Shown here: piece by piece, positions 1,989 through 48,029 of the stretch
How the letters are laid out: each line of letters starts with the position of its first letter
How positions within the stretch are numbered: position 1 is the stretch's first letter
Sequence record: NC_062581.1
Direction: 5' to 3' (one strand)
Length of the DNA stretch: 64,000 bases
Position numbers and translations under genes: made by a program
Notes under the pieces: generated by a model
Databases searched by the model: none
The model's input: only the letters and a program-made list of their open reading frames with translations
Told to the model about the DNA's origin: nothing

Positions 1989-2198
1989 ATGAATATGTTG
2001 TTTCTAGTGTGGTTGATATCACTGGCCATTACTATTGCTGCTTGTTGGTACCGAGATAACAAATACCCGTATGACACAACTCATCACGATGTTTGGAGTA
2101 AATCGGTTTCACATCGAATCGCTCTAATTGCATTTGTTATTACGCTGTCTGGTTTGGCCTTGTTCCTATTCATGTACTTTAAGGATACCTGGGCATGA
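1989..2198 (+). CDS. Small two-TM membrane protein
   Basis: GGAGG SD; two hydrophobic segments; 4-nt overlap with next ORF. Confidence 0.7.
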   Translation: MNMLFLVWLISLAITIAACWYRDNKYPYDTTHHDVWSKSVSHRIALIAFVITLSGLALFLFMYFKDTWA

Positions 2199-2398
2199 AT
2201 GCATTATTAGCTTTTGCAGTTGTGTACGCCGTATTGACTGGTTATTTCTATCGTGAAGTTCGACTAGCTAAATACGCTGACATTCGTTACAACACGGATT
2301 TCTTTTCCACCTCTGCTAAACAACATTTGTATTCAAATGCTTTGTTGTGTTTGATTTGTTTAATCATGGCAATTGTGGTCCATCTAATTACTAAATAA
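2195..2398 (+). CDS. Small two-TM membrane protein
   Basis: Two hydrophobic segments flanking a DFFST loop; ATGA coupling. Confidence 0.7.
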   Translation: MNALLAFAVVYAVLTGYFYREVRLAKYADIRYNTDFFSTSAKQHLYSNALLCLICLIMAIVVHLITK

Positions 2399-2432
2399 TT
2401 TAAACTTTCCTAAGGCCTATATTACAATAGTG
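2399..2432 (+). promoter_or_regulatory. phiKZ-type early (virion RNAP) promoter
   Basis: TTTAAA at 2399, TATATTAC at 2418-2425, GTG 4 nt downstream; TATATTAC is the reported phiKZ early motif. Confidence 0.8.
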
Positions 2433-2461
2433 AATATGGGCTTTATTTAAGGAGTACGATT

Positions 2462-2638
2462 ATGTGGGCCGCTTTTATTCTGCCTTTGGTGGCAGTGTTT
2501 GTATTGGGTGTTACCTTGATCATGGGTGCTGGTGGTAGCAAGTCATCCGGTGGTGCAGCGGTACGCCTATTTACAGGTGGCGCACTAGTACTGGCGGCAG
2601 GCTATCTGTTCATTGTCATGGTTTCTAAACTAACTTAA
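2462..2638 (+). CDS. 58-aa two-TM protein (below ORF-track cutoff)
   Basis: TAAGGAG SD; MWAAFILPLVAVFVLGVTLIMGAGGSKSSGGAAVRLFTGGALVLAAGYLFIVMVSKLT. Confidence 0.7.
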   Translation: MWAAFILPLVAVFVLGVTLIMGAGGSKSSGGAAVRLFTGGALVLAAGYLFIVMVSKLT

Positions 2639-41252: not shown

Positions 41253-41286
41253 TTTAAACCATTTAAAAGCCTATATTACAATAGTG
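41253..41286 (+). promoter_or_regulatory. Early promoter
   Basis: TTTAAA 41253, TATATTAC 41272-41279, GTG 4 nt later. Confidence 0.85.
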
Positions 41287-41313: not shown

Positions 41314-41481
41314 ATGAATAAGAATATTGATGAATCGGTAAATGAACATTATCGTGGAATGGCCGATGGTTCTAAACCGGTTCCAGTTTCATTTGATATC
41401 CCCTGGATCACACCTCGCCGACTGGGTTTACTCTTCGGAGTAAGCCTCGTTATGACCGTTATGTTCAACGGTGTAATTTGA
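41314..41481 (+). CDS. 55-aa protein with C-terminal TM
   Basis: AAGGA SD; MNKNIDESVNEH...RRLGLLFGVSLVMTVMFNGVI. Confidence 0.6.
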   Translation: MNKNIDESVNEHYRGMADGSKPVPVSFDIPWITPRRLGLLFGVSLVMTVMFNGVI

Positions 41482-41489
41482 TTCATTGA

Positions 41490-41523
41490 TTTAAAACATT
41501 TAGAACGCTATATTACAAACGTG
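41490..41523 (+). promoter_or_regulatory. Early promoter
   Basis: TTTAAA 41490, TATATTAC 41509-41516. Confidence 0.85.
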
Positions 41524-41554
41524 TATATAGCCAAATAAACCTTAGGAATTTCCC

Positions 41555-41677
41555 ATGAAAGAGTTTGCCAAAGCCGTAGCCTGCACTGTAGTTGTTGCGG
41601 TTTCTGCACACTACTTGACCCAAGTGATTGTCAAGAACATTGACAAGCAAATGGACAAACGCAAAAAACCCAAATAG
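41555..41677 (+). CDS. 40-aa signal-anchor microprotein
   Basis: TAGGA SD; MKEFAKAVACTVVVAVSAHYLTQVIVKNIDKQMDKRKKPK. Confidence 0.6.
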   Translation: MKEFAKAVACTVVVAVSAHYLTQVIVKNIDKQMDKRKKPK

Positions 41678-41693
41678 TAGAAGGAGTTACACC

Positions 41694-41999
41694 ATGAATA
41701 AATTTGCACTCGGCATGATTGTTGGTGTGGTAGGCCTTGTCGGCGTAATGGCTGTTAAGGTGGCCCGTGTTTCACTGCGTCACGAAGAAGCAGTCATCCA
41801 GTTCGATAAAGCGTTCACAGCCCTGAAACATAAAAGGGCTATCAACAAAATAACGCTCGAAGAAGCGATTGCCGAGTATGAGCTCATTCATGCGAAAGCA
41901 GTGGACAGTTGTATGGAACACACGTTGGATGGCAAGAAAACCCATAAGTGGCTGAAACGCATGCATGGGCTTAACATTGCAATATTGACTAACATTTAA
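41694..41999 (+). CDS. N-terminal TM plus helical domain protein
   Basis: AAGGAG SD before MNKFALG. Confidence 0.7.
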   Translation: MNKFALGMIVGVVGLVGVMAVKVARVSLRHEEAVIQFDKAFTALKHKRAINKITLEEAIAEYELIHAKAVDSCMEHTLDGKKTHKWLKRMHGLNIAILTNI

Positions 42000-42008
42000 G
42001 GGTACCCC

Positions 42009-42386
42009 ATGGATTACGTTTTCATCGCTGTGCTGCTTGTAGTCATTATGCTTTTAGCGAAGCGGACTTTCAAAAGCAACAACCGCCGTTTCATTGAAGC
42101 TAATATTGAACGTGAGGTAACAGAGCATGTTCAAAGGCTCGTCCGAAGTACGCCGGAGTTCTTTGATCAAACCAAGCCCTATAGTCAACTTGATTCAAGG
42201 CTTGAATTTGAGTTTAAGTACTTACCGTTGTACCGTGCAGCATTTAAGCGACGGGGTGTAATCTTAATGGAAGCACCTTTGAAAACCCAACTGCATGGCT
42301 ATAGCCACATGTTGCGCTATGGTCGTAATACGATCCCAGTTAAAAACTTTGTGGACATCACTGCGATTTCCACTGTAGTTGTTTGA
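42009..42386 (+). CDS. N-terminal TM protein
   Basis: MDYVFIAVLLVVIMLLAKR; 125 aa. Confidence 0.7.
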   Translation: MDYVFIAVLLVVIMLLAKRTFKSNNRRFIEANIEREVTEHVQRLVRSTPEFFDQTKPYSQLDSRLEFEFKYLPLYRAAFKRRGVILMEAPLKTQLHGYSHMLRYGRNTIPVKNFVDITAISTVVV

Positions 42387-42387
42387 A

Positions 42388-42421
42388 TTGAAAGCAAACT
42401 GAGGTCTATATTACGTCTGTG
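42388..42421 (+). promoter_or_regulatory. Early promoter
   Basis: TTGAAA 42388, TATATTAC 42407-42414. Confidence 0.75.
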
Positions 42422-42456
42422 CAAGAAACCCTTGTTCACCCATTAGGGAGAATCAC

Positions 42457-42642
42457 ATGGACGAAATAAAGGTCGCTGCGATGGTCCTTATCGGTGGTGT
42501 ACACTTTGTGGAAGTATCTCGACAGTTTGATAAGCCTCAAGAACATCGAGACGTTCCTCAAATGCTAACCAGTGGTGCAATTGTAACACTTTGCGCTGTG
42601 GGTATTGCAACCATCGTAAAACGGCAAGTCACTGATCGTTAG
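42457..42642 (+). CDS. 61-aa membrane microprotein, paralogue of 42652-42825
   Basis: GGGAG SD; two hydrophobic stretches around a KP loop. Confidence 0.65.
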   Translation: MDEIKVAAMVLIGGVHFVEVSRQFDKPQEHRDVPQMLTSGAIVTLCAVGIATIVKRQVTDR

Positions 42643-42651
42643 GAGAGAACT

Positions 42652-42825
42652 ATGTTCAATACCATTCGTATCGCTGCACTCGGCGTCATCGGTATAGCGC
42701 ATCTGGGTGCGATCGGTCACGAACTTAACAAACCCGAAAGGGATCGTCGTTCTGGACAAGTTGTCACCTCTACAGTAGTTGTCGGCCTTTGTGCTGCAGG
42801 TATCTATTACTGCACTCGTAAGTAA
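42652..42825 (+). CDS. 57-aa membrane microprotein
   Basis: AGGAG SD; MFNTIRIAALGVIGIAHLGAIGHELNKPERDRRSGQVVTSTVVVGLCAAGIYYCTRK. Confidence 0.65.
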   Translation: MFNTIRIAALGVIGIAHLGAIGHELNKPERDRRSGQVVTSTVVVGLCAAGIYYCTRK

Positions 42826-42865
42826 TCGCAACTAAACATTAACTTTAGATTAAGGAGTATCGAAC

Positions 42866-42979
42866 ATGCAGGCATTGGTAGTTAGCTTGGCAACTCGTAT
42901 TGTGTATGCCACTGCGGCTGGCGTGATCACGCACTATGTTGTTAAAGCTGTCTGTAAAGACAGTTCCAAACTGCGGTAG
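42866..42979 (+). CDS. 37-aa hydrophobic microprotein
   Basis: TAAGGAG SD; MQALVVSLATRIVYATAAGVITHYVVKAVCKDSSKLR. Confidence 0.6.
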   Translation: MQALVVSLATRIVYATAAGVITHYVVKAVCKDSSKLR

Positions 42980-43065
42980 TAACGCAGGCGAGTCTGTGGT
43001 TGTCGTGATCATAGACTCGGTCCATTCTGAACGATTCCTTATTTCTTTTTATCAGGTGTAAAGAC

Positions 43066-43236
43066 ATGACTTTCAAAGGTCTCTTTTCAAGCGATCCGAA
43101 GAACGCGATGTCTCAGAAGGATATCGAGCTCAACACATCGCGTATCAAGTTGTTAACGGCAGTAGGTGGTATGGCTACAATGTTTCTGGGCATGGCACTG
43201 ACATCTGTCAAGCTGGCAAATGAGTTGAAAAAATAA
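43066..43236 (+). CDS. 56-aa protein with C-terminal hydrophobic helix
   Basis: AGGT SD; MTFKGLFSSDPK...LLTAVGGMATMFLGMALTSVKLANELKK. Confidence 0.6.
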   Translation: MTFKGLFSSDPKNAMSQKDIELNTSRIKLLTAVGGMATMFLGMALTSVKLANELKK

Positions 43237-43303
43237 TCAACTCAATCTAATGAGGGGAGTCTTGCGGACTCCTCCATTAATTAATTTCATGGGAGCCAGA
43301 ATC

Positions 43304-43780
43304 ATGGCTGAATTCATTATCGGTAAAGATATCTTTAATACACCCGGAGATCTTTACTTTATTACCGTAAACACAATTGGTGTGATGGGTGCAGGTGTTG
43401 CTAAAGCATTTGCAGAACGTCATCCTGATCTGTTTAAAAAATACAAGCACGATTGTAAAATGAAATCCATTACAATCGGACATCCTGCACTTTATGAAGG
43501 TACGGATGGCAAACGTTACTTGATGTTCCCCACTAAAGAAAATTGGCGGAATCCATCAACTTACGAATACGTCGCTATGGGCCTAAAATGGTTAGAAGAC
43601 AACATTGGCGAAGAAGAAGATCAAATTGATCCTAAGTGGACTTTGGTTGTACCACCCCTAGGTTGTGGACATGGTGGATTAGACTTTGACATTGTTTCTG
43701 AAATGATTGAAGAATCGTCGTTAAAGATTCCTAACAAGATGGTAGTTGTTTATCCACCTTGGATGGCAAACCAACAGTGA
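43304..43780 (+). CDS. Macrodomain ADP-ribosylhydrolase (DarG/TARG1-like)
   Basis: VNTIGVMGAGVAKAF, FPTKENWR, LGCGHGGL motifs; GGGAG SD. Confidence 0.88.
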   Translation: MAEFIIGKDIFNTPGDLYFITVNTIGVMGAGVAKAFAERHPDLFKKYKHDCKMKSITIGHPALYEGTDGKRYLMFPTKENWRNPSTYEYVAMGLKWLEDNIGEEEDQIDPKWTLVVPPLGCGHGGLDFDIVSEMIEESSLKIPNKMVVVYPPWMANQQ

Positions 43781-43783
43781 TAT

Positions 43784-43820
43784 GCCATAAGTGCTTCCCT
43801 GAGGGGAAGCCTTTATGCCG
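43784..43820 (+). terminator. Hairpin, conserved-flank family
   Basis: GCTTCCC-TGAG-GGGAAGC-CTTTATGCCG. Confidence 0.75.
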
Positions 43821-43829
43821 TGCCATTGA

Positions 43830-43863
43830 TTGAAAAGAATTAAACCCCTATATTACAAACGTG
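43830..43863 (+). promoter_or_regulatory. Early promoter
   Basis: TTGAAA 43830, TATATTAC 43849-43856. Confidence 0.85.
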
Positions 43864-43890
43864 TACATACAGACAAATTAAGGATTGATC

Positions 43891-44226
43891 ATGACTCAAA
43901 CAACTATCCACCCTATCCGTTCTTTCATCGAATACATCACCGATGCTGAATCCGTATGGGACCCAACCCGTTACATTCAGGGCCGTCGTCTGAGTGATAG
44001 CAACGCTGAATTCGAATACATGCTTACGTATTCGTATCTGCTGGGTGGTGCTTACATGACCGGTACTTTTGGTAAAGAAGGTATCACTGTTGAACTGTGG
44101 TTCCGTGACACCCAAGGTTTCCAAATTGCTGTTTCTCTGGACGGCAAAGAACTCGATCGTTTCAGCTACCCACCGCACGCCACTGAAGAAGTCATCCAAC
44201 GTCTGGAACATCTGGCTTCTGCTTAA
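43891..44226 (+). CDS. Hypothetical early protein
   Basis: TAAGGA SD; strongly biased codon use. Confidence 0.72.
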   Translation: MTQTTIHPIRSFIEYITDAESVWDPTRYIQGRRLSDSNAEFEYMLTYSYLLGGAYMTGTFGKEGITVELWFRDTQGFQIAVSLDGKELDRFSYPPHATEEVIQRLEHLASA

Positions 44227-44257
44227 CCGACAATTCCCCACATTAAGAGTAAACATC

Positions 44258-44533
44258 ATGCGCACTTTTCTTCTTGTTACTGCTGGTCTGGTTGTATCCG
44301 CGGTAGCAACATCCTGGAACCAGTCTCGTTTGAATCGTAATGATTACATGCGTGACATCCCAAAAGAAATTGAAAGCGAAATGCAAAACTACACTTTCAA
44401 GCCTTCTTTTGAAGAGCTGAAAGAAGACCTGTCGCATTTTGAACACTGGGCGCGTCTCTGCATTATGCATGATTCGCACCGTGAAGAGTTCATCGAAGAG
44501 CTCAATAAACAAATCCGCATGGCAACTCGCTAA
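44258..44533 (+). CDS. N-terminal TM protein
   Basis: MRTFLLVTAGLVVSAVATSW... Confidence 0.68.
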   Translation: MRTFLLVTAGLVVSAVATSWNQSRLNRNDYMRDIPKEIESEMQNYTFKPSFEELKEDLSHFEHWARLCIMHDSHREEFIEELNKQIRMATR

Positions 44534-44546
44534 GTAAGGAATCATC

Positions 44547-44987
44547 ATGACGCAGTCTAAACAACACACCTCTGCTGAACTGGCTACTTTCCGTGCACAC
44601 CTGTCCCATCAGGTTATGCAAGCAGCATTTACTTTTGGTCCTCGTTCTCCGATGGCCCAACAAGTAACCCGTGGACATCAGATCTACAAGATCGATTGTG
44701 CCGTGGAAGCAGATCGCATGACCTATACTTTCATCTACGATGAAGCAGGTGGTGTTGTGAAGGCTGTTGAAGAAGTGTATCCTACGGCAGACGATGCTGT
44801 TCAGAAATATGTTTGCCAACGTTTCAATGTAATGCTCTTTGGCCAAAGCGTTGAAGAACATGCATCCGTTACAATCGACGGTATCGAAGTGGATGACCAT
44901 TTCGAAAAACTGTTGGACGACGGTGTGATTCGTAACTTCTTTCGTGAGACGGTCGTCCGCGATCGTACCGAAAAAACCATTAACTAA
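44547..44987 (+). CDS. Hypothetical early protein
   Basis: TAAGGA SD; 146 aa. Confidence 0.72.
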   Translation: MTQSKQHTSAELATFRAHLSHQVMQAAFTFGPRSPMAQQVTRGHQIYKIDCAVEADRMTYTFIYDEAGGVVKAVEEVYPTADDAVQKYVCQRFNVMLFGQSVEEHASVTIDGIEVDDHFEKLLDDGVIRNFFRETVVRDRTEKTIN

Positions 44988-45247
44988 TGGACACAAAAGT
45001 GATAAACAAATTGCATGCTAGTGAACGTGCATTCGATGTGGATGCAATCATCAAGTCAGCTGAAGAACAGCAGTTTTACGAAGCTCGCAATCCACCGAAT
45101 CTTTCTAACAAGGATCGCAAAAACCTGGCGGTATTGAGACACAATGAAAATTATGTTGCGCAAAAAGAAAGCTCCGCTGAGCGAGTGATGCGCGATGTAA
45201 AAGAATACCGTGAGTTGATTAACAACGAACTACCGTTAGCTAAATAA
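44987..45247 (+). CDS. Hypothetical early protein
   Basis: TAATG coupling. Confidence 0.65.
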   Translation: MDTKVINKLHASERAFDVDAIIKSAEEQQFYEARNPPNLSNKDRKNLAVLRHNENYVAQKESSAERVMRDVKEYRELINNELPLAK

Positions 45248-45250
45248 GAC

Positions 45251-45271
45251 ATGGGGGATTCGATCCCCCAT
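45251..45271 (+). terminator. Perfect hairpin after 44987-45247
   Basis: ATGGGGGA-TTCGA-TCCCCCAT; no U-tract. Confidence 0.5.
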
Positions 45272-45337
45272 AGTCCATCTGCAAGATATCATATCGATGC
45301 TTTGCAAATGCACTATACCCCACATTAAGGATTCAAC

Positions 45338-45508
45338 ATGAAAGGCGTAATCTTCTTCCTGGTTGGCGTTGCTGTTAGTTCTGTCTCGTTGTCGAACTTG
45401 GTCACTATGGCTGATGATCGCCGGGCTGTACAAGTTGTAGCTAAGCAAGAAATCGTAATTGGTCATCGCATTGGTTCTTTGGGCCAAGAAATCCTGGTGA
45501 CCAAATGA
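45338..45508 (+). CDS. 56-aa signal-peptide/TM microprotein
   Basis: TAAGGA SD; MKGVIFFLVGVAVSSVSLSNLV... Confidence 0.62.
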   Translation: MKGVIFFLVGVAVSSVSLSNLVTMADDRRAVQVVAKQEIVIGHRIGSLGQEILVTK

Positions 45509-45828
45509 AAGAGTTAATCGATATCGTTGCATTGATTGCCCCATTTGTTTTGGCTTTCATTGTAACGTTCTTCGAGGCATTTGTTAAATCGTTCCAATCC
45601 CGTAATATTGCCCAAGGTCATGAGTGGGTAGCGGCAGGTACTTCGGTATTAGTCACTACTACCATTTTTGCAACCTTTGGGTTATTTTTGCATTCGGGTT
45701 GGATAGTATTTGTACCTTCTGCTTTAGGGGGTGCAATGGGTACGTTCTTTTCTATACGCACCCACAAGAAATTGTTTAAAGGCATAAAGCCCCCTACCCC
45801 CAATTTAAGCGAAGGAATAAAAATATGA
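45505..45828 (+). CDS. Small multi-pass membrane protein
   Basis: Three hydrophobic segments; VKSFQSRN, AAGTS, LGGAMG; ATGA coupling. Confidence 0.7.
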   Translation: MKELIDIVALIAPFVLAFIVTFFEAFVKSFQSRNIAQGHEWVAAGTSVLVTTTIFATFGLFLHSGWIVFVPSALGGAMGTFFSIRTHKKLFKGIKPPTPNLSEGIKI

Positions 45829-46028
45829 ACGCTCTTAAATATCTGGCACTCGGTGCAGCTGCTGGTGCAATCATGGGTACTGGTATCAGCCTGGTTCGTG
45901 AAGGTGTACGTGTGACCGTCAATGGTCGTGAGGTTGACAAACTGGTTGTTACCGGTGTCGGTGTAGGCATGACCACCGTCGGCTTCTGTGTTGCATTGCA
46001 GACGATTGTATCCGCCCTCAAAAAGTGA
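45825..46028 (+). CDS. Gly-rich two-helix membrane microprotein
   Basis: AAGGA SD; GxxxG-rich helices. Confidence 0.68.
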   Translation: MNALKYLALGAAAGAIMGTGISLVREGVRVTVNGREVDKLVVTGVGVGMTTVGFCVALQTIVSALKK

Positions 46029-46062
46029 TTTAAAACATTTAAAAGGCTATATTACAATCGTG
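46029..46062 (+). promoter_or_regulatory. Early promoter
   Basis: TTTAAA 46029, TATATTAC 46048-46055. Confidence 0.85.
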
Positions 46063-46092
46063 TCAATAACCCATTAACTCAAGGAGTGTCTA

Positions 46093-46290
46093 ATGTCTTT
46101 GGCAACTAGATTAATTTCCGCAGCAGGTTCGGGTGCAACGATTGCTTCTGGTTTGGTATTTGCCAACATGGGAATTCAAAGCAAGAAGTATAGTCGCACT
46201 AAAGACCTGGCTAACAATCTGTTAATTGGTGGTGGTGCTGTTATCACCGTAATCGGCGTGGCTAACATGGTCAACGCTTTTCGCAACTAA
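46093..46290 (+). CDS. Gly/Ala-rich two-helix membrane microprotein
   Basis: AAGGAG SD. Confidence 0.68.
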   Translation: MSLATRLISAAGSGATIASGLVFANMGIQSKKYSRTKDLANNLLIGGGAVITVIGVANMVNAFRN

Positions 46291-46317
46291 TTTCTGAAAA
46301 CATTAAGGTTAACAATC

Positions 46318-46440
46318 ATGGGTACTTTCGGTAAGATTATTGTTCTGGCAATTGTAATGGGTGCGGTTGAACAAGTTGTCCTTTCCATTTCGGATAGCTA
46401 TCGCCCCAACCCTAAAAAAGATGAAAAAGGTCAGAAGTAA
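46318..46440 (+). CDS. 40-aa signal-anchor microprotein
   Basis: TAAGGT SD; MGTFGKIIVLAIVMGAVEQVVLSISDSYRPNPKKDEKGQK. Confidence 0.6.
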   Translation: MGTFGKIIVLAIVMGAVEQVVLSISDSYRPNPKKDEKGQK

Positions 46441-46482
46441 TTCTGCCGTTCCAAACCTCTTAATTCAACAGTGAGTATCACC

Positions 46483-46614
46483 ATGATTGTTAAAGCTTTC
46501 TCTGAAATGGGCACCTTTGGTAAAATTGTTGCTATTGCAATAGTCATTGGTACCACTCGGCAATGTGTTAAACATGTTGCCCAAACCGTTCGCATGAACA
46601 AAGCTGCAAAGTAA
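46483..46614 (+). CDS. 43-aa microprotein, paralogue of 46318-46440
   Basis: MIVKAFSEMGTFGKIVAIAIVIGTTRQCVKHVAQTVRMNKAAK. Confidence 0.6.
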   Translation: MIVKAFSEMGTFGKIVAIAIVIGTTRQCVKHVAQTVRMNKAAK

Positions 46615-46673
46615 AATAACCCCCCTCGGTCTCTAAGAGGCCAAACCTCAAAAGCGAAAGAAGGAATAACACC

Positions 46674-46850
46674 ATGTTCAATACTGTCCTCCGTGTTGCT
46701 GCTGTTGCTGGTCTGTGCTACATCTCTTTCCAGGTTGGCCGTAACTGGAATGAAATTGCTGCTGATGCAGCTGAAGTAGTTGCCAGCACCGCTGATCCAC
46801 AAGTTCCTACTGGTCCTGAAACCGGTACCACCATTCCTACTGGGGAGTAA
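46674..46850 (+). CDS. 58-aa signal-anchor microprotein with Pro/Thr tail
   Basis: AAGGA SD; MFNTVLRVAAVAGLCYISFQVG... Confidence 0.62.
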   Translation: MFNTVLRVAAVAGLCYISFQVGRNWNEIAADAAEVVASTADPQVPTGPETGTTIPTGE

Positions 46851-46853
46851 GCT

Positions 46854-47138
46854 ATGTCACTGCTCGGTACCCTGATCAAAGTCGGTGTCGTTGCCACTGT
46901 AGTTGTTATCAGTCAACGCCTATGGGATCGCTATCAGGTTGAAGACCTGTATACCGAACTCGATGCATTGGTTGAGCGCATTCGCAACCGCAAAGACCGA
47001 ATGGGTACCGTGCGTGCTCATCTGCTGGTTGAGTCGAAAGATTTGATCGCTCAGTACGAAAAGAAAGTTAACTACGTAGACTCGTTAAACGAGTTGCGTC
47101 GTAACGTCGAAATTTATATTGAGTCTATTCCAGACTGA
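46854..47138 (+). CDS. N-terminal TM plus coiled-coil protein
   Basis: GGGAG SD; 94 aa. Confidence 0.7.
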   Translation: MSLLGTLIKVGVVATVVVISQRLWDRYQVEDLYTELDALVERIRNRKDRMGTVRAHLLVESKDLIAQYEKKVNYVDSLNELRRNVEIYIESIPD

Positions 47139-47143
47139 TATAG

Positions 47144-47186
47144 CTGGCGGGGGACTTATGTCTCCCGCTAGTACCTTTTCTTTTTT
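47144..47186 (+). terminator. Intrinsic terminator
   Basis: CTGGCGGGGGAC-TTAT-GTCTCCCGCTAG then T-rich tract. Confidence 0.8.
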
Positions 47187-47554: not shown

Positions 47555-47740
47555 ATGAAGAAATATTTATTGGCAATGTCTATTTGCTGCGCTTGCGTTA
47601 TTGGTGTAGCGCAAGCCATGTTGGAACTCGAAAAACCAGTAGGGGGTGTTTCTGACACTTTCTGTAAACGAGTTAAAAAACCATGCGTGTCATACAGCTA
47701 CGAGGTTCAGCATGAAACGGTCGCTATTAATAAGCCCTGA
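47555..47740 (+). CDS. 61-aa signal-peptide protein with cysteines
   Basis: MKKYLLAMSICCACVIGVAQA signal-like N-terminus. Confidence 0.55.
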   Translation: MKKYLLAMSICCACVIGVAQAMLELEKPVGGVSDTFCKRVKKPCVSYSYEVQHETVAINKP

Positions 47741-48029
47741 AGAAATGCTGATGCGTTACCCGCATCTGCGTCAGGCTTTAAACAATACACCTGCAAAAAT
47801 AGATGTATTGGAAATACCGTTTGACATGGCTAAGCTGATGTTCAAAATTCACTTGACTAATCGGTTACTCAAAACAGGTATTGCTTTAAAAGAGATTCAC
47901 GCTATTCTAGAGGATGATGAAAAAATCAAACCTCTGTTGGCTGAATTAATGGATGAGGTAGTTCCTGGTACCACTTACGTCGAAGTTATTCGCTCTCCCA
48001 GTGTTTTAGATATTAAGGAAAACCAATGA
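47712..48029 (+). CDS. Stand-alone RNAP beta-prime dock-region-like protein
   Basis: IPFDMAKLMFKIHLTNRL ... ELMDEVV....VEVIRSPSVL aligned by eye to E. coli beta-prime [18 protein letters not shown] ... [25 protein letters not shown] SD; alternative start 47745. Confidence 0.55.
   Translation: MKRSLLISPEEMLMRYPHLRQALNNTPAKIDVLEIPFDMAKLMFKIHLTNRLLKTGIALKEIHAILEDDEKIKPLLAELMDEVVPGTTYVEVIRSPSVLDIKENQ

What the first reader, a model, noticed from the sequence alone, without database searches (positions are those of the whole stretch)
41314..47138. Dense early array of membrane microproteins, many missed by the ORF track
About 16 of the roughly 20 ORFs here have a TM or signal anchor, and at least eight are under 60 aa, most with clear SD sites (41314, 41555, 42652, 42866, 43066, 45338, 46318, 46483, 46674). 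They follow the densest early promoters, so they should be among the first proteins made. phiKZ-like phages transcribe early genes from a membrane-bound compartment, so a dedicated membrane toolkit (vesicle maintenance, exclusion, or inhibition of membrane-bound defence effectors) is a plausible undescribed system.
Basis: partly seen in the sequence, partly recalled or inferred. Interest (0 to 1): 0.68.

Follow-up and report, generated by a model that had tools for sequence, protein, structure and literature searches.

The report
Early membrane-microprotein island of phage Psa21
A 5.8-kb stretch of the jumbo Pseudomonas phage Psa21 holds 21 small genes, 17 of them for tiny membrane-anchored or secreted proteins that are clearly under selection and sit behind five early-type promoters; it is the most expanded version of an accessory locus shared by phiKZ-like Pseudomonas phages, and its job is still unknown.

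Summary
The window is Pseudomonas phage Psa21 (bases 62001-126000). 41314-47138 carries 21 same-strand CDS (gp115-gp135). Five of the genome's 31 phiKZ-type early promoter motifs (TATATTAC, all on one strand) lie here. It is the densest hydrophobic gene run in the genome (Fisher p 1e-6).

The genes are real. Five related genomes keep intact collinear orthologues, with dN/dS 0.05-0.35. All are already annotated in GenBank as hypothetical proteins, although relatives' records miss some.

The locus is not unique to Psa21. phiKZ (gp102.1-gp108, gp010.1), PhiPA3, 201phi2-1 and PS119XW hold smaller versions at the same place, around the anti-DarT macrodomain AdfM (gp123 here). Published phiKZ deletions removing the gp115 orthologue and gp103 are viable.

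Best reading: a fast-evolving, accessory set of early effectors aimed at the host envelope, for phage competition or counter-defence. A core role in the early infection vesicle is unsupported. The 'holin' label on gp129 is weak. The scan holds no earlier finding of this on other DNA.

The parts
41271..41279 (+). Early-type promoter core P1 (CTATATTAC), 19 nt after the gp114 stop and 42 nt before gp115
   Evidence: motif equals the phiKZ early promoter core (PMC7058600 Table 2)
41314..41481 (+). gp115, 55 aa, C-terminal tail anchor; orthologue of PHIKZ102.1
   Evidence: dN/dS 0.05-0.18; HMM E 4.9e-5 to PHIKZ102.1
41508..41516 (+). Early-type promoter core P2
41555..41677 (+). gp116, 40 aa, one weakly hydrophobic helix plus a basic tail; paralogue of gp121
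   Evidence: (z 4.7)
41694..41999 (+). gp117, 101 aa, N-terminal membrane anchor plus a helical domain
42009..42386 (+). gp118, 125 aa, N-terminal membrane anchor plus a conserved C-terminal domain
   Evidence: ESM Atlas uninformative
42406..42414 (+). Early-type promoter core P3
42457..42642 (+). gp119, 61 aa, two-helix hairpin; tandem paralogue of gp120
   Evidence: z 16.8; family has only about 10 representatives among 1.84 billion
42652..42825 (+). gp120, 57 aa, two-helix hairpin
42866..42979 (+). gp121, 37 aa, single helix; paralogue of gp116
43066..43236 (+). gp122, 56 aa, C-terminal anchor; look-alikes in 201phi2-1 (gp166) and an unannotated PhiPA3 ORF at the same position
   Evidence: HMM E 0.0035
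43304..43780 (+). gp123, 158 aa, soluble DarG2-like macrodomain, probable AdfM (anti-DarT) orthologue
   Evidence: E 7.9e-76 to PHIKZ104; PMC13309987
43848..43856 (+). Early-type promoter core P4
43891..44226 (+). gp124, 111 aa, soluble; homologue of PHIKZ018
44258..44533 (+). gp125, 91 aa, N-terminal signal-peptide-like segment ending in small residues (A-V-A), probably exported
   Evidence: cleavage site read by eye (inference)
44547..44987 (+). gp126, 146 aa, soluble, unknown function
44999..45247 (+). gp127, 82 aa, soluble; an alternative ATG at 44987 overlaps the gp126 stop
45250..45325 (+). Conserved hairpin followed by a degenerate copy of the early promoter, ahead of gp128
   Evidence: aligned with true TATATTAC of phiKZ gp010.1 and PS119XW; D6 has TATATTGC
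45338..45508 (+). gp128, 56 aa, signal-peptide-like N-terminus plus a conserved C-terminal motif; family of PHIKZ010.1
   Evidence: phrog_15989; 74 records, all Pseudomonas phages
45505..45828 (+). gp129, 107 aa, three hydrophobic segments, conserved loop motif, basic tail; labelled 'holin' in RefSeq; start overlaps the gp128 stop
   Evidence: (phrog_7045 E 2.6e-10)
45825..46028 (+). gp130, 67 aa, Gly/Ala-rich two-helix hairpin; start overlaps the gp129 stop
46047..46055 (+). Early-type promoter core P5
46093..46290 (+). gp131, 65 aa, Gly-rich two-helix hairpin
46318..46440 (+). gp132, 40 aa, N-terminal helix plus a conserved R-P-N-P-K tail; paralogue of gp133
   Evidence: (z 14.7)
46483..46614 (+). 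gp133, 43 aa, borderline hydrophobic helix
46674..46850 (+). gp134, 58 aa, borderline N-terminal helix plus an acidic Pro/Thr-rich tail; same build seen in 201phi2-1 gp170, PS119XW gp117 and a PhiPA3 unannotated ORF
46854..47138 (+). gp135, 94 aa, N-terminal anchor plus a helical domain; best conserved of the anchored proteins
47143..47172 (+). Only strong intrinsic terminator on the + strand; closes the island

Best explanation
This is the expanded Psa21-clade version of an accessory early locus of Pseudomonas chimalliviruses. The virion RNA polymerase most likely transcribes it from five TATATTAC promoters soon after injection (inferred). Host ribosomes make the products.

By sequence the products fall into four groups:
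- about 13 single-helix or hairpin inner-membrane microproteins, either tail-anchored or N-anchored;
- one three-helix protein (gp129);
- two signal-peptide-bearing, probably periplasmic small proteins (gp125, gp128);
- four soluble proteins, including the anti-DarT macrodomain AdfM (gp123).

The membrane proteins would enter the host inner membrane through the host insertion machinery or spontaneously. There they would act as small binders or modulators of envelope components. The most likely payoff is competitive: shutting out superinfecting phages and/or blunting envelope-based host defences. They are not a core step of replication.

Shown: the genes are real, selected, hydrophobic, clustered, promoter-linked, fast-evolving, duplicated in tandem and variable between genera, and two phiKZ orthologues or neighbours are dispensable. 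Inferred: early timing, membrane location, and the exclusion or counter-defence role.
For: Real, selected genes: intact, collinear, same-length orthologues with ribosome sites and the hydrophobic segment at the same place occur in D6, RVTF4 and three IMG/VR genomes. dN/dS is 0.05-0.35 for every micro gene in two genome pairs.

Membrane bias is specific to this locus. It is the densest run in the genome. The genes behind most of the genome's other promoter motifs encode soluble proteins.

Early timing: the promoter motif is identical to phiKZ's early core. Such motifs proved to be early vRNAP promoters wherever they were profiled (PMC7598289).

Accessory, arms-race signature:
- Proteins are only 27-68% identical while the DNA is not alignable.
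- There are tandem paralogue pairs: gp119/120, gp132/133, gp116/121.
- The families are tiny and clade-restricted.
- Gene content differs between phiKZ, PhiPA3, 201phi2-1, PS119XW and Psa21 at the same locus.
- The island embeds a proven type of counter-defence gene, AdfM.
- RVTF4 carries a lipoprotein at the equivalent spot.
- phiKZ p32 (PHIKZ102.1) and gp103 are described as non-essential flanking genes, deleted in viable mutants (tag-to-name match).
Against: No function has been tested for any member. No homology to any known exclusion, holin, toxin or anti-defence family was found, apart from the weak PHROG label on gp129.

Transmembrane prediction rests on a simple hydropathy scale. Several helices are Gly/Ala/Thr-rich and only moderately hydrophobic: the summed Hessa-type scale gives about 0 to +4.

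No transcript, ribosome or peptide data for Psa21 could be reached. The gp128-130 unit has only a degenerate promoter copy, so its timing is open.

Purifying selection and cross-genus retention of gp115, gp122 and gp128 could equally fit a conserved physiological role.
Confidence: 0.5

Rival explanations
1. Housekeeping host takeover. The microproteins reprogramme ordinary inner-membrane physiology (energy coupling, transport, division, secretion) to favour phage production, rather than acting in phage competition or defence.
For: There is early-type promoter control. All members are under purifying selection. gp115, gp122 and gp128 relatives are retained across several Pseudomonas chimallivirus genera. 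The restriction to Pseudomonas phages fits host-specific membrane targets.
Against: Gene content turns over strongly between genera and there are tandem duplications. phiKZ p32 and gp103 are dispensable on laboratory hosts. The island sits with a counter-defence gene.
Confidence: 0.2
2. Toolkit for the early infection (EPI) vesicle: the proteins insert into or act on the vesicle to maintain it, export mRNA, or hand the genome to the phage nucleus.
For: Chimalliviruses transcribe early genes from a lipid vesicle whose phage-encoded membrane components are unknown. Tail-anchored and very small proteins can in principle insert into any bilayer. Polysomes form at the vesicle surface.
Against: The homologous locus was found only in Pseudomonas phages, and enterobacterial chimalliviruses lack it, whereas EPI vesicles occur in E. 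coli phage Goslar too. The number of members varies from about 5 to 17. phiKZ p32 and gp103 are non-essential. The vesicle forms before any gene is expressed.
Confidence: 0.1
3. Lysis-timing module: gp129 is a class I-type holin, and neighbouring small membrane proteins (gp128, gp130 and others) act as antiholins or regulators, giving lysis inhibition or a second lysis pathway.
For: gp129 matches phrog_7045 'holin' (E 2.6e-10). It has three hydrophobic segments and a basic C-terminal tail. A homologue in Stappia podophage SI01 overlaps the start of a muramidase gene. gp128, gp129 and gp130 are translationally coupled. phiKZ shows multiplicity-dependent lysis delay (PMC12894885 abstract).
Against: Psa21 has a complete phiKZ-type lysis cassette elsewhere: Rz-like spanin gp194 through transglycosylase gp198, at genome 152983-155522. 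The phiKZ holin is gp142, class III. Other homologues of gp129 sit next to Thg1, a 7-deazaguanine cluster or a phosphohydrolase, not lysins. No Pfam or NCBIfam holin model matches. The strongly conserved cytoplasmic loop is unlike typical holin diversity. The reference phiKZ lacks the gene in the corresponding 14.5 kb.
Confidence: 0.1

Closest known systems
phiKZ locus gp102 / gp102.1 / gp103 / gp104 (AdfM) / gp106.1-gp108, plus PHIKZ010.1, and the equivalent loci of PhiPA3, 201phi2-1 and PS119XW
   Same: Same genomic position, after the gp101/gp102-type late genes. The same early promoter motif follows directly after the gp102/gp114 homologue. There are homologous members: gp114 = gp102, gp115 = gp102.1, gp123 = gp104, gp128 = gp010.1. 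The same protein builds recur: tail anchors, N-anchored helical proteins, and a helix plus an acidic tail.
   Different: Psa21 and its close relatives have about three times as many hydrophobic genes (17 against 5-6), with clade-specific families (gp119/120, gp132/133, gp135) and tandem duplicates. In phiKZ the gp010.1 part lies elsewhere in the record. None of these genes has a described function.
Early small envelope proteins that exclude superinfecting phages (T4 Imm and Sp, T5 Llp, Cor of lambdoid phages); from my own knowledge
   Same: Small size, early expression, one or two membrane helices or a lipoprotein signal, an accessory nature and fast evolution. RVTF4's island lipoprotein gives a faint PHROG match to Cor, mainly over the signal peptide.
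   Different: No sequence relationship for any Psa21 member. No exclusion phenotype has been tested. Here there are 17 genes in one block rather than one or two.
Holin/antiholin pairs (lambda S105/S107, T4 T/RI; phiKZ gp142/gp143, PMC12894885)
   Same: gp129 is about 100 aa with three hydrophobic segments and a basic tail. gp128 upstream has a signal-anchor-like N-terminus, as T4 RI does. The genes overlap.
   Different: The position is in an early-type operon, far from the phage's own lysis cassette. The contexts of homologues are heterogeneous. No holin model other than one PHROG matches.
AdfM, the chimallivirus DarG2-like anti-DarT macrodomain (phiKZ gp104; PMC13309987)
   Same: gp123 is full-length and about 60% identical to phiKZ-group macro proteins. 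It matches DarG (NCBIfam E 8e-40) and the PDB entries 5M3E and 5M3I. It has Asn23 and Lys78, the positions named as active-site residues for phiKZ AdfM.
   Different: It is not a membrane protein. It is relevant only as the one island member whose family has a demonstrated counter-defence role. The activity of gp123 itself is untested.
Small phage gene families enriched in transmembrane or secreted products (large metagenomic surveys of phage small genes; from my own knowledge)
   Same: ORFs under 60-70 aa, often missed by gene callers, with one helix or a signal peptide and conserved within narrow phage clades.
   Different: Those surveys list families. They do not describe a conserved, promoter-dense island of them in nucleus-forming phages.

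Membership tests
phiKZ-type early (virion RNA polymerase) operon | Conserved AT-rich motif (TATATTAC core) just upstream of the operon, strand-specific and intergenic | tested here: met
   31 copies in the genome, all on the + strand, 29 intergenic, 5 in the island, 42-50 nt before the start codons. The same core is listed for phiKZ.
phiKZ-type early (virion RNA polymerase) operon | Transcripts appear in the first minutes of infection | not testable with these tools
Timing is inferred from PMC7598289.
Integral membrane or secreted microproteins | A hydrophobic stretch of about 19 residues, or an N-terminal signal, conserved in position among orthologues | tested here: met
   14 clear and 3 borderline of 21. 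The segment lies at the same position in up to five orthologues despite 30-65% identity. The chance rate is 13%.
Integral membrane or secreted microproteins | Demonstrated membrane or periplasmic location | not testable with these tools
Holin (gp129) | Small protein with at least one transmembrane domain and a charged C-terminus | tested here: met
   Three hydrophobic segments and a basic tail.
Holin (gp129) | Encoded with an endolysin or spanins in a lysis cassette | tested here: not met
   The Psa21 lysis cassette lies at genome 152983-155522. Only one of four homologues examined in other phages (three non-jumbo phages and 201phi2-1) abuts a muramidase.
Holin (gp129) | Match to a curated holin model | tested here: inconclusive
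   phrog_7045 'holin' gives E 2.6e-10, but no Pfam or NCBIfam holin family matches for it or 15 relatives.
Holin (gp129) | Timed, energy-poison-triggerable lethality that releases an endolysin | not testable with these tools
   This is a bench assay.
AdfM / DarG2-like macrodomain (gp123) | Macro fold with the DarG-type catalytic Asn and Lys, and full-length similarity to phiKZ gp104 | tested here: met
   Pfam Macro scores 33.2 bits, above the cut-off of 22. NCBIfam DarG gives E 8e-40 over the macro part. PDB 5M3E and 5M3I match. The profile of gp123 and its five orthologues gives E 7.9e-76 to PHIKZ104. Asn23 and Lys78 are read directly from the sequence, against the residues named.
Superinfection-exclusion membrane proteins (Imm, Sp, Cor, Llp types) | Sequence membership in a known exclusion family | tested here: not met
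   No PHROG or Pfam hit for any Psa21 member. The only hint is a faint Cor-like hit for the RVTF4 lipoprotein.
Superinfection-exclusion membrane proteins (Imm, Sp, Cor, Llp types) | Expression blocks entry of a second phage | not testable with these tools
   This is a bench assay.
Core component of the chimallivirus EPI vesicle | Conserved in all chimalliviruses that form the vesicle | tested here: not met
   The gp128 family occurs only in Pseudomonas phages. gp135 and gp122 occur only in Psa21, D6 and RVTF4 among 50,697 phage records. Salmonella and Erwinia relatives have a different locus.
Core component of the chimallivirus EPI vesicle | Required for infection | tested here: not met
   This rests on the literature only and covers two phiKZ genes: p32 (PHIKZ102.1) and gp103 are deleted in viable phiKZ mutants (PMC13309987; for the tag).

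The most novel reading that the evidence does not exclude
Part of the island is a counter-measure against envelope-acting anti-jumbo-phage immunity. Small phage membrane proteins would insert next to, or into, the early infection vesicle or the inner membrane. There they would block pore-forming effectors of the Juk or Dionysus type, or other membrane abortive-infection effectors. This would explain the early timing, the rapid turnover, the tandem duplication and the neighbourhood of AdfM.
Probability: 0.1. Interest if true: 0.8.

Novelty: new variant of a known kind. Interest (0 to 1): 0.42.

Why it matters
Nucleus-forming jumbo phages escape DNA-targeting immunity, so the defences that matter against them act early and often at membranes (Juk, Dionysus). 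The phage side of that contest is largely unknown.

This locus is a compact candidate set that can be deleted. It holds about 17 selected, early-promoter-driven envelope proteins in Psa21, with smaller homologous sets in the model phages phiKZ, PhiPA3 and 201phi2-1, where genetics and microscopy already exist.

It also shows that current records under-annotate the locus: PhiPA3, D6 and many phiKZ-like genomes miss members. Psa21 is a biocontrol candidate against kiwifruit canker, so accessory genes that set host range or phage-phage exclusion have practical weight.

If the genes turn out to be dispensable everywhere, the locus is simply another block of phage orphan genes.

Tried and rejected
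There is no verdict, and I make no binding claim.

Searches that gave nothing useful:
- Family scans (PHROGs, Pfam, NCBIfam) of all 21 proteins and of extra island genes of relatives gave nothing beyond gp123, gp124, gp128 and gp129.
- PDB sequence searches for gp124 and the gp129 family were blank.
- ESM Atlas for gp118 and gp135 gave only generic helical or hypothetical look-alikes below the useful score.
- The word-based protein search for gp129 returned only 14 close relatives.
- Literature searches for a description of the array, or for phiKZ gp010.1, 012, 018, 019, 102.1, 103 and 106-108, found only incidental mentions. Searches were badly framed and wasted.
- Earlier scan notes gave nothing usable on this stretch.

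Readings rejected:
- Chance ORFs: rejected on dN/dS and synteny.
- 'gp129 is the lysis holin': rejected because a canonical lysis cassette lies elsewhere.
- My own interim claim that phiKZ and 201phi2-1 lack the array: searches showed they have smaller versions at the AdfM locus.
- Paralogues of the island families elsewhere in the Psa21 genome: none found.

Full report
IDENTITY AND ANATOMY

The window is identical to Pseudomonas phage Psa21 (Tepukevirus; 305,260 bp), bases 62001-126000. The finding's coordinates cover 21 + strand CDS, gp115 to gp135. All are already present in both GenBank records as hypothetical proteins, except gp123 ('macro domain') and, in RefSeq only, gp129 ('holin').

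The block begins 19 nt after the stop of gp114, which follows the late virion gene gp113. It ends at the only strong + strand intrinsic terminator in the region, 47143-47172. gp136, just beyond, is a protein of the same build.

Hydrophobic content. I used the classical 19-residue Kyte-Doolittle window.
- Fourteen of 21 products reach 1.6 or more: gp115-122, gp128-132 and gp135.
- Three reach 1.52-1.56: gp125, gp133 and gp134.
- Four have no hydrophobic segment: gp123, gp124, gp126 and gp127.

Size and ribosome sites. Nine products are under 60 aa. Ribosome-binding sites of the AGGA, GGAG or AAGG kind precede nearly all. gp122 and gp133 have weak ones.

Comparison with the rest of the genome. 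I built a rough gene caller, a three-periodic Markov model with a ribosome-site score. It gives 382 calls against 420 annotated protein genes (428 features in the record), and it missed gp129.
- On those calls, 12 of 20 genes here carry a hydrophobic segment, against 43 of 362 elsewhere (Fisher p 1.3e-6).
- This is the richest run of 20 genes in the genome.
- Non-gene ORFs of 35-70 aa pass the threshold in 13% of cases, against 10 of 12 small CDS here.

Promoters.
- The octamer TATATTAC occurs 31 times in the genome, never on the - strand, and is intergenic in 29 cases.
- Five copies lie in the island, each 42-50 nt before a start codon. No other 6-kb stretch has more than two.
- The genes behind most of the genome's other copies encode soluble proteins, so the membrane bias belongs to this locus and not to early genes in general.

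ARE THE MICRO-ORFS GENES?

Yes. D6 and RVTF4 (GenBank) and three IMG/VR contigs (L011-L013) carry the same block in the same order. The DNA no longer aligns outside the macrodomain gene.

Nearly every micro-ORF nevertheless has an intact orthologue of the same length. Each is preceded by a ribosome site and has the hydrophobic segment at the same residues, at 27-68% identity.

Nei-Gojobori estimates for the pairs L012/L013 and L011/D6 give dN/dS of 0.05-0.35 for every member, including the 37-43 aa ones. Chance ORFs are excluded.

Some families arose by local duplication. Smith-Waterman scores against 2000 shuffles give:
- gp119/gp120: z 16.8;
- gp132/gp133: z 14.7;
- gp116/gp121: z 4.7;
- the N-termini of gp134 and gp120: z 6.3.
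There are no paralogues elsewhere in the genome.

The families are narrow. A profile of gp119/120 found only about ten small proteins among 1.84 billion representatives. gp135 and gp122 occur only in Psa21, D6 and RVTF4 among 50,697 phage records.

WHAT KINDS OF PROTEIN?

Classification is by position of the hydrophobic segment and flanking charges, and by reading the orthologue sets.
- C-terminal tail anchors: gp115, gp122.
- Very short single-helix proteins: gp116, gp121, gp132, gp133.
- A helix plus an acidic Pro/Thr-rich tail: gp134.
- Two-helix hairpins with a charged loop: gp119, gp120, gp130, gp131. The last two are Gly-rich.
- N-terminal anchors followed by 70-110 aa helical or mixed domains: gp117, gp118, gp135, gp136.
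- Three hydrophobic segments: gp129.
- Cleavable-signal-like N-termini: gp125 and gp128. The hydrophobic core ends in small residues of the A-x-A type in most orthologues. This reading is by eye and is an inference.

Taken together, the products are aimed at the inner membrane and periplasm.

THE WIDER LOCUS (THIS CHANGED MY READING)

I first looked only around homologues of gp129 and concluded that phiKZ and 201phi2-1 lack the array. Searching with gp123 and with PHIKZ010.1 showed otherwise. The true counterpart lies after the phiKZ gp101/gp102-type late genes, around the macrodomain gene.

- phiKZ. gp102 is the gp114 homologue (E 6.8e-18), and a TATATTAC motif follows it at once. Next comes PHIKZ102.1, a 41-aa tail-anchored protein homologous to gp115 (profile E 4.9e-5). 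Both proteins end in F-N-G-(V)-I. Then come membrane-anchored gp103, AdfM (gp104), a second promoter, and gp106.1, gp107 and gp108 with hydrophobic segments.
- 201phi2-1. gp166, gp169, gp170, gp171, gp173, gp179 and gp180 are of the same builds. Six of 17 genes pass the 1.6 threshold, and gp171 is borderline at 1.59.
- PhiPA3. gp109-113 are hydrophobic, and there are at least five unannotated small hydrophobic ORFs. These include a gp115-like and a gp122-like ORF (profile E 0.034 and 0.0035) in the right order between the gp102 homologue and AdfM.
- PS119XW. Seven of eight consecutive small genes are hydrophobic.
- The gp128 family equals PHIKZ010.1, PhiPA3 gp111 and 201phi2-1 gp173, and it is also in phage EL. 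It is present in 74 records, every one a Pseudomonas phage.
- Salmonella and Erwinia chimalliviruses place their macrodomain gene next to the endolysin and have no homologous island.

So this is an old accessory locus of Pseudomonas chimalliviruses with lineage-specific gain, loss and duplication. The Psa21 clade holds the largest version.

EXPERIMENTAL ANCHORS FROM THE LITERATURE

- Early promoters. In RNAP-encoding jumbo phages a conserved AT-rich motif near -10 marks early operons, and it proved to be the early promoter wherever transcripts were profiled (PMC7598289). The phiKZ core is listed as TATATTAC, and the 201phi2-1 consensus resembles the Psa21 extended motif (PMC7058600 Table 2).
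- AdfM. phiKZ gp104 is a nuclear DarG2-like macrodomain that removes DarT2 ADP-ribosylation (PMC13309987). By every sequence test, gp123 is its orthologue.
- Dispensability. [quoted passage not shown] PHIKZ_p32 is the locus tag of PHIKZ102.1. The gp115 orthologue and a membrane-anchored neighbour are therefore dispensable in the laboratory.
- EPI vesicle. It is made from host inner membrane at injection. It is transcriptionally active and is found in Goslar, 201phi2-1 and phiKZ. Known defences that hit it use pore-forming proteins (Juk, Dionysus). I found no paper naming phage-encoded membrane proteins of the vesicle, and none describing this island.

gp129

The RefSeq 'holin' label comes from similarity to phrog_7045 (E 2.6e-10). 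The protein has holin-like gross features. One homologue, in Stappia podophage SI01, overlaps a muramidase gene.

Against the label:
- Psa21 has a full phiKZ-type lysis cassette elsewhere.
- The phiKZ holin is gp142 (PMC12894885).
- Other homologues follow Thg1 (201phi2-1), a FolE/QueD/tRNA-ribosyltransferase cluster (Shewanella S0112) or precede a phosphohydrolase (TPWB-08).
- No Pfam or NCBIfam holin model matches the protein or 15 relatives.
- The loop between the first two helices is almost invariant, with the motif F-x-E-A-x-V-K-x-F-Q-S-R-N-I-A-Q-G. That is unusual for holins.

I treat the label as unproven.

MECHANISM

What is shown stops at this point: selected, clustered, promoter-linked small hydrophobic or exported proteins, in an accessory locus with rapid turnover that also houses a counter-defence enzyme.

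The step from there to function is inference. I favour early envelope-directed effectors used in competition, meaning exclusion of other phages and/or neutralising envelope-based defences (0.5). The reasons are the turnover, the tandem duplication, the dispensability in phiKZ, the restriction to one host genus and the company of AdfM.

Rivals:
- Housekeeping takeover of membrane physiology (0.2) fits the cross-genus retention of gp115, gp122 and gp128.
- A vesicle toolkit (0.1).
- A lysis-timing module (0.1).
The last two are weakened by the evidence above.

LIMITS

- Hydropathy is a crude predictor, and several helices are only moderately hydrophobic.
- My gene caller is approximate.
- The dN/dS values rest on saturated or near-saturated dS in some pairs.
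- Early timing is inferred from motif identity.
- The gp128-130 unit has only a degenerate promoter copy behind a conserved hairpin.
- No reads, folds or complex predictions could be obtained.

Noticed in passing
window 43304-43780: gp123 is a probable orthologue of AdfM, the chimallivirus anti-DarT2 macrodomain. It is about 60% identical over its full length to phiKZ-group proteins, matches DarG models and PDB 5M3E/5M3I, and has Asn23 and Lys78 at the positions named for phiKZ AdfM. GenBank calls it only 'macro domain-containing protein'.
   Followed up: partly
window 45338-45508; L010 4570-4719; L018 4440-4592; L017 5263-5418: The gp128 / PHIKZ010.1 family is a roughly 50-aa protein with a signal-peptide-like N-terminus and a strongly conserved C-terminal motif (I-L-G-H-R-I-G-P-N-G-Q-E-M-L-V-T-K type). 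It was found in 74 phage records spanning phiKZ, PhiPA3, EL, 201phi2-1, PS119XW and the Psa21 clade, all Pseudomonas phages. It may be an exported early peptide.
   Followed up: partly
whole genome; window 2418, 41272, 41509, 42407, 43849, 46048, 54246: The 31 TATATTAC promoters fall into two upstream flavours. One reads ATTTAAAA-c-ATTTAAAAGG-CTATATTAC-AA..GTG and includes most of those in this island. The other reads AAAATCTCAGAT-CTATATTAC-TA. All 31 are on the + strand.
   Followed up: no
window 1989-2638 (genome 63989-64638): There is a second, smaller cluster of three strongly hydrophobic small genes (69, 67 and 58 aa) around another early-type promoter at window 2418. They are unrelated in sequence to the island families.
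   Followed up: no
L003 6487-6651 (phage D6); L018 2280-2420, 2430-2600, 3283-3390, 3838-3993, 5434-5616 (PhiPA3): Unannotated small hydrophobic ORFs lie at positions syntenic with Psa21 gp115, gp122 and gp134-type genes. The public records of D6 and PhiPA3 appear to miss them.
   Followed up: partly
(phiKZ-like records such as PA7, fnug, OMKO1); L006 5007-5297: The gp129 family gene is left unannotated in many phiKZ-like GenBank records. It is absent from the first 14.5 kb of the phiKZ reference, although KTN4 has it there.
   Followed up: partly
L016 2462-2734 (Shewanella phage S0112): A gp129-family membrane protein sits directly after a GTP cyclohydrolase I / QueD / tRNA-ribosyltransferase (7-deazaguanine-type) gene set and before the DNA polymerase genes. 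This context does not suggest a holin.
   Followed up: no
L004 11172-11420 (phage RVTF4): RVTF4 has an 82-aa lipoprotein (lipobox L-T-G-C; phrog_902) where Psa21 has gp126-gp127. Its match to the Cor exclusion family is faint and lies mainly over the signal peptide.
   Followed up: partly
window 44987-45247: gp127 is annotated from GTG 44999, but an ATG at 44987 overlaps the gp126 stop codon (TAATG) and would add four residues.
   Followed up: no
window 47646-48029: gp137 gives a PHROG match to an RNA polymerase beta-type subunit (phrog_2987, E 3.2e-5) over residues 49-119. This agrees with the scan's separate note on a free-standing RNA polymerase fragment gene.
   Followed up: no
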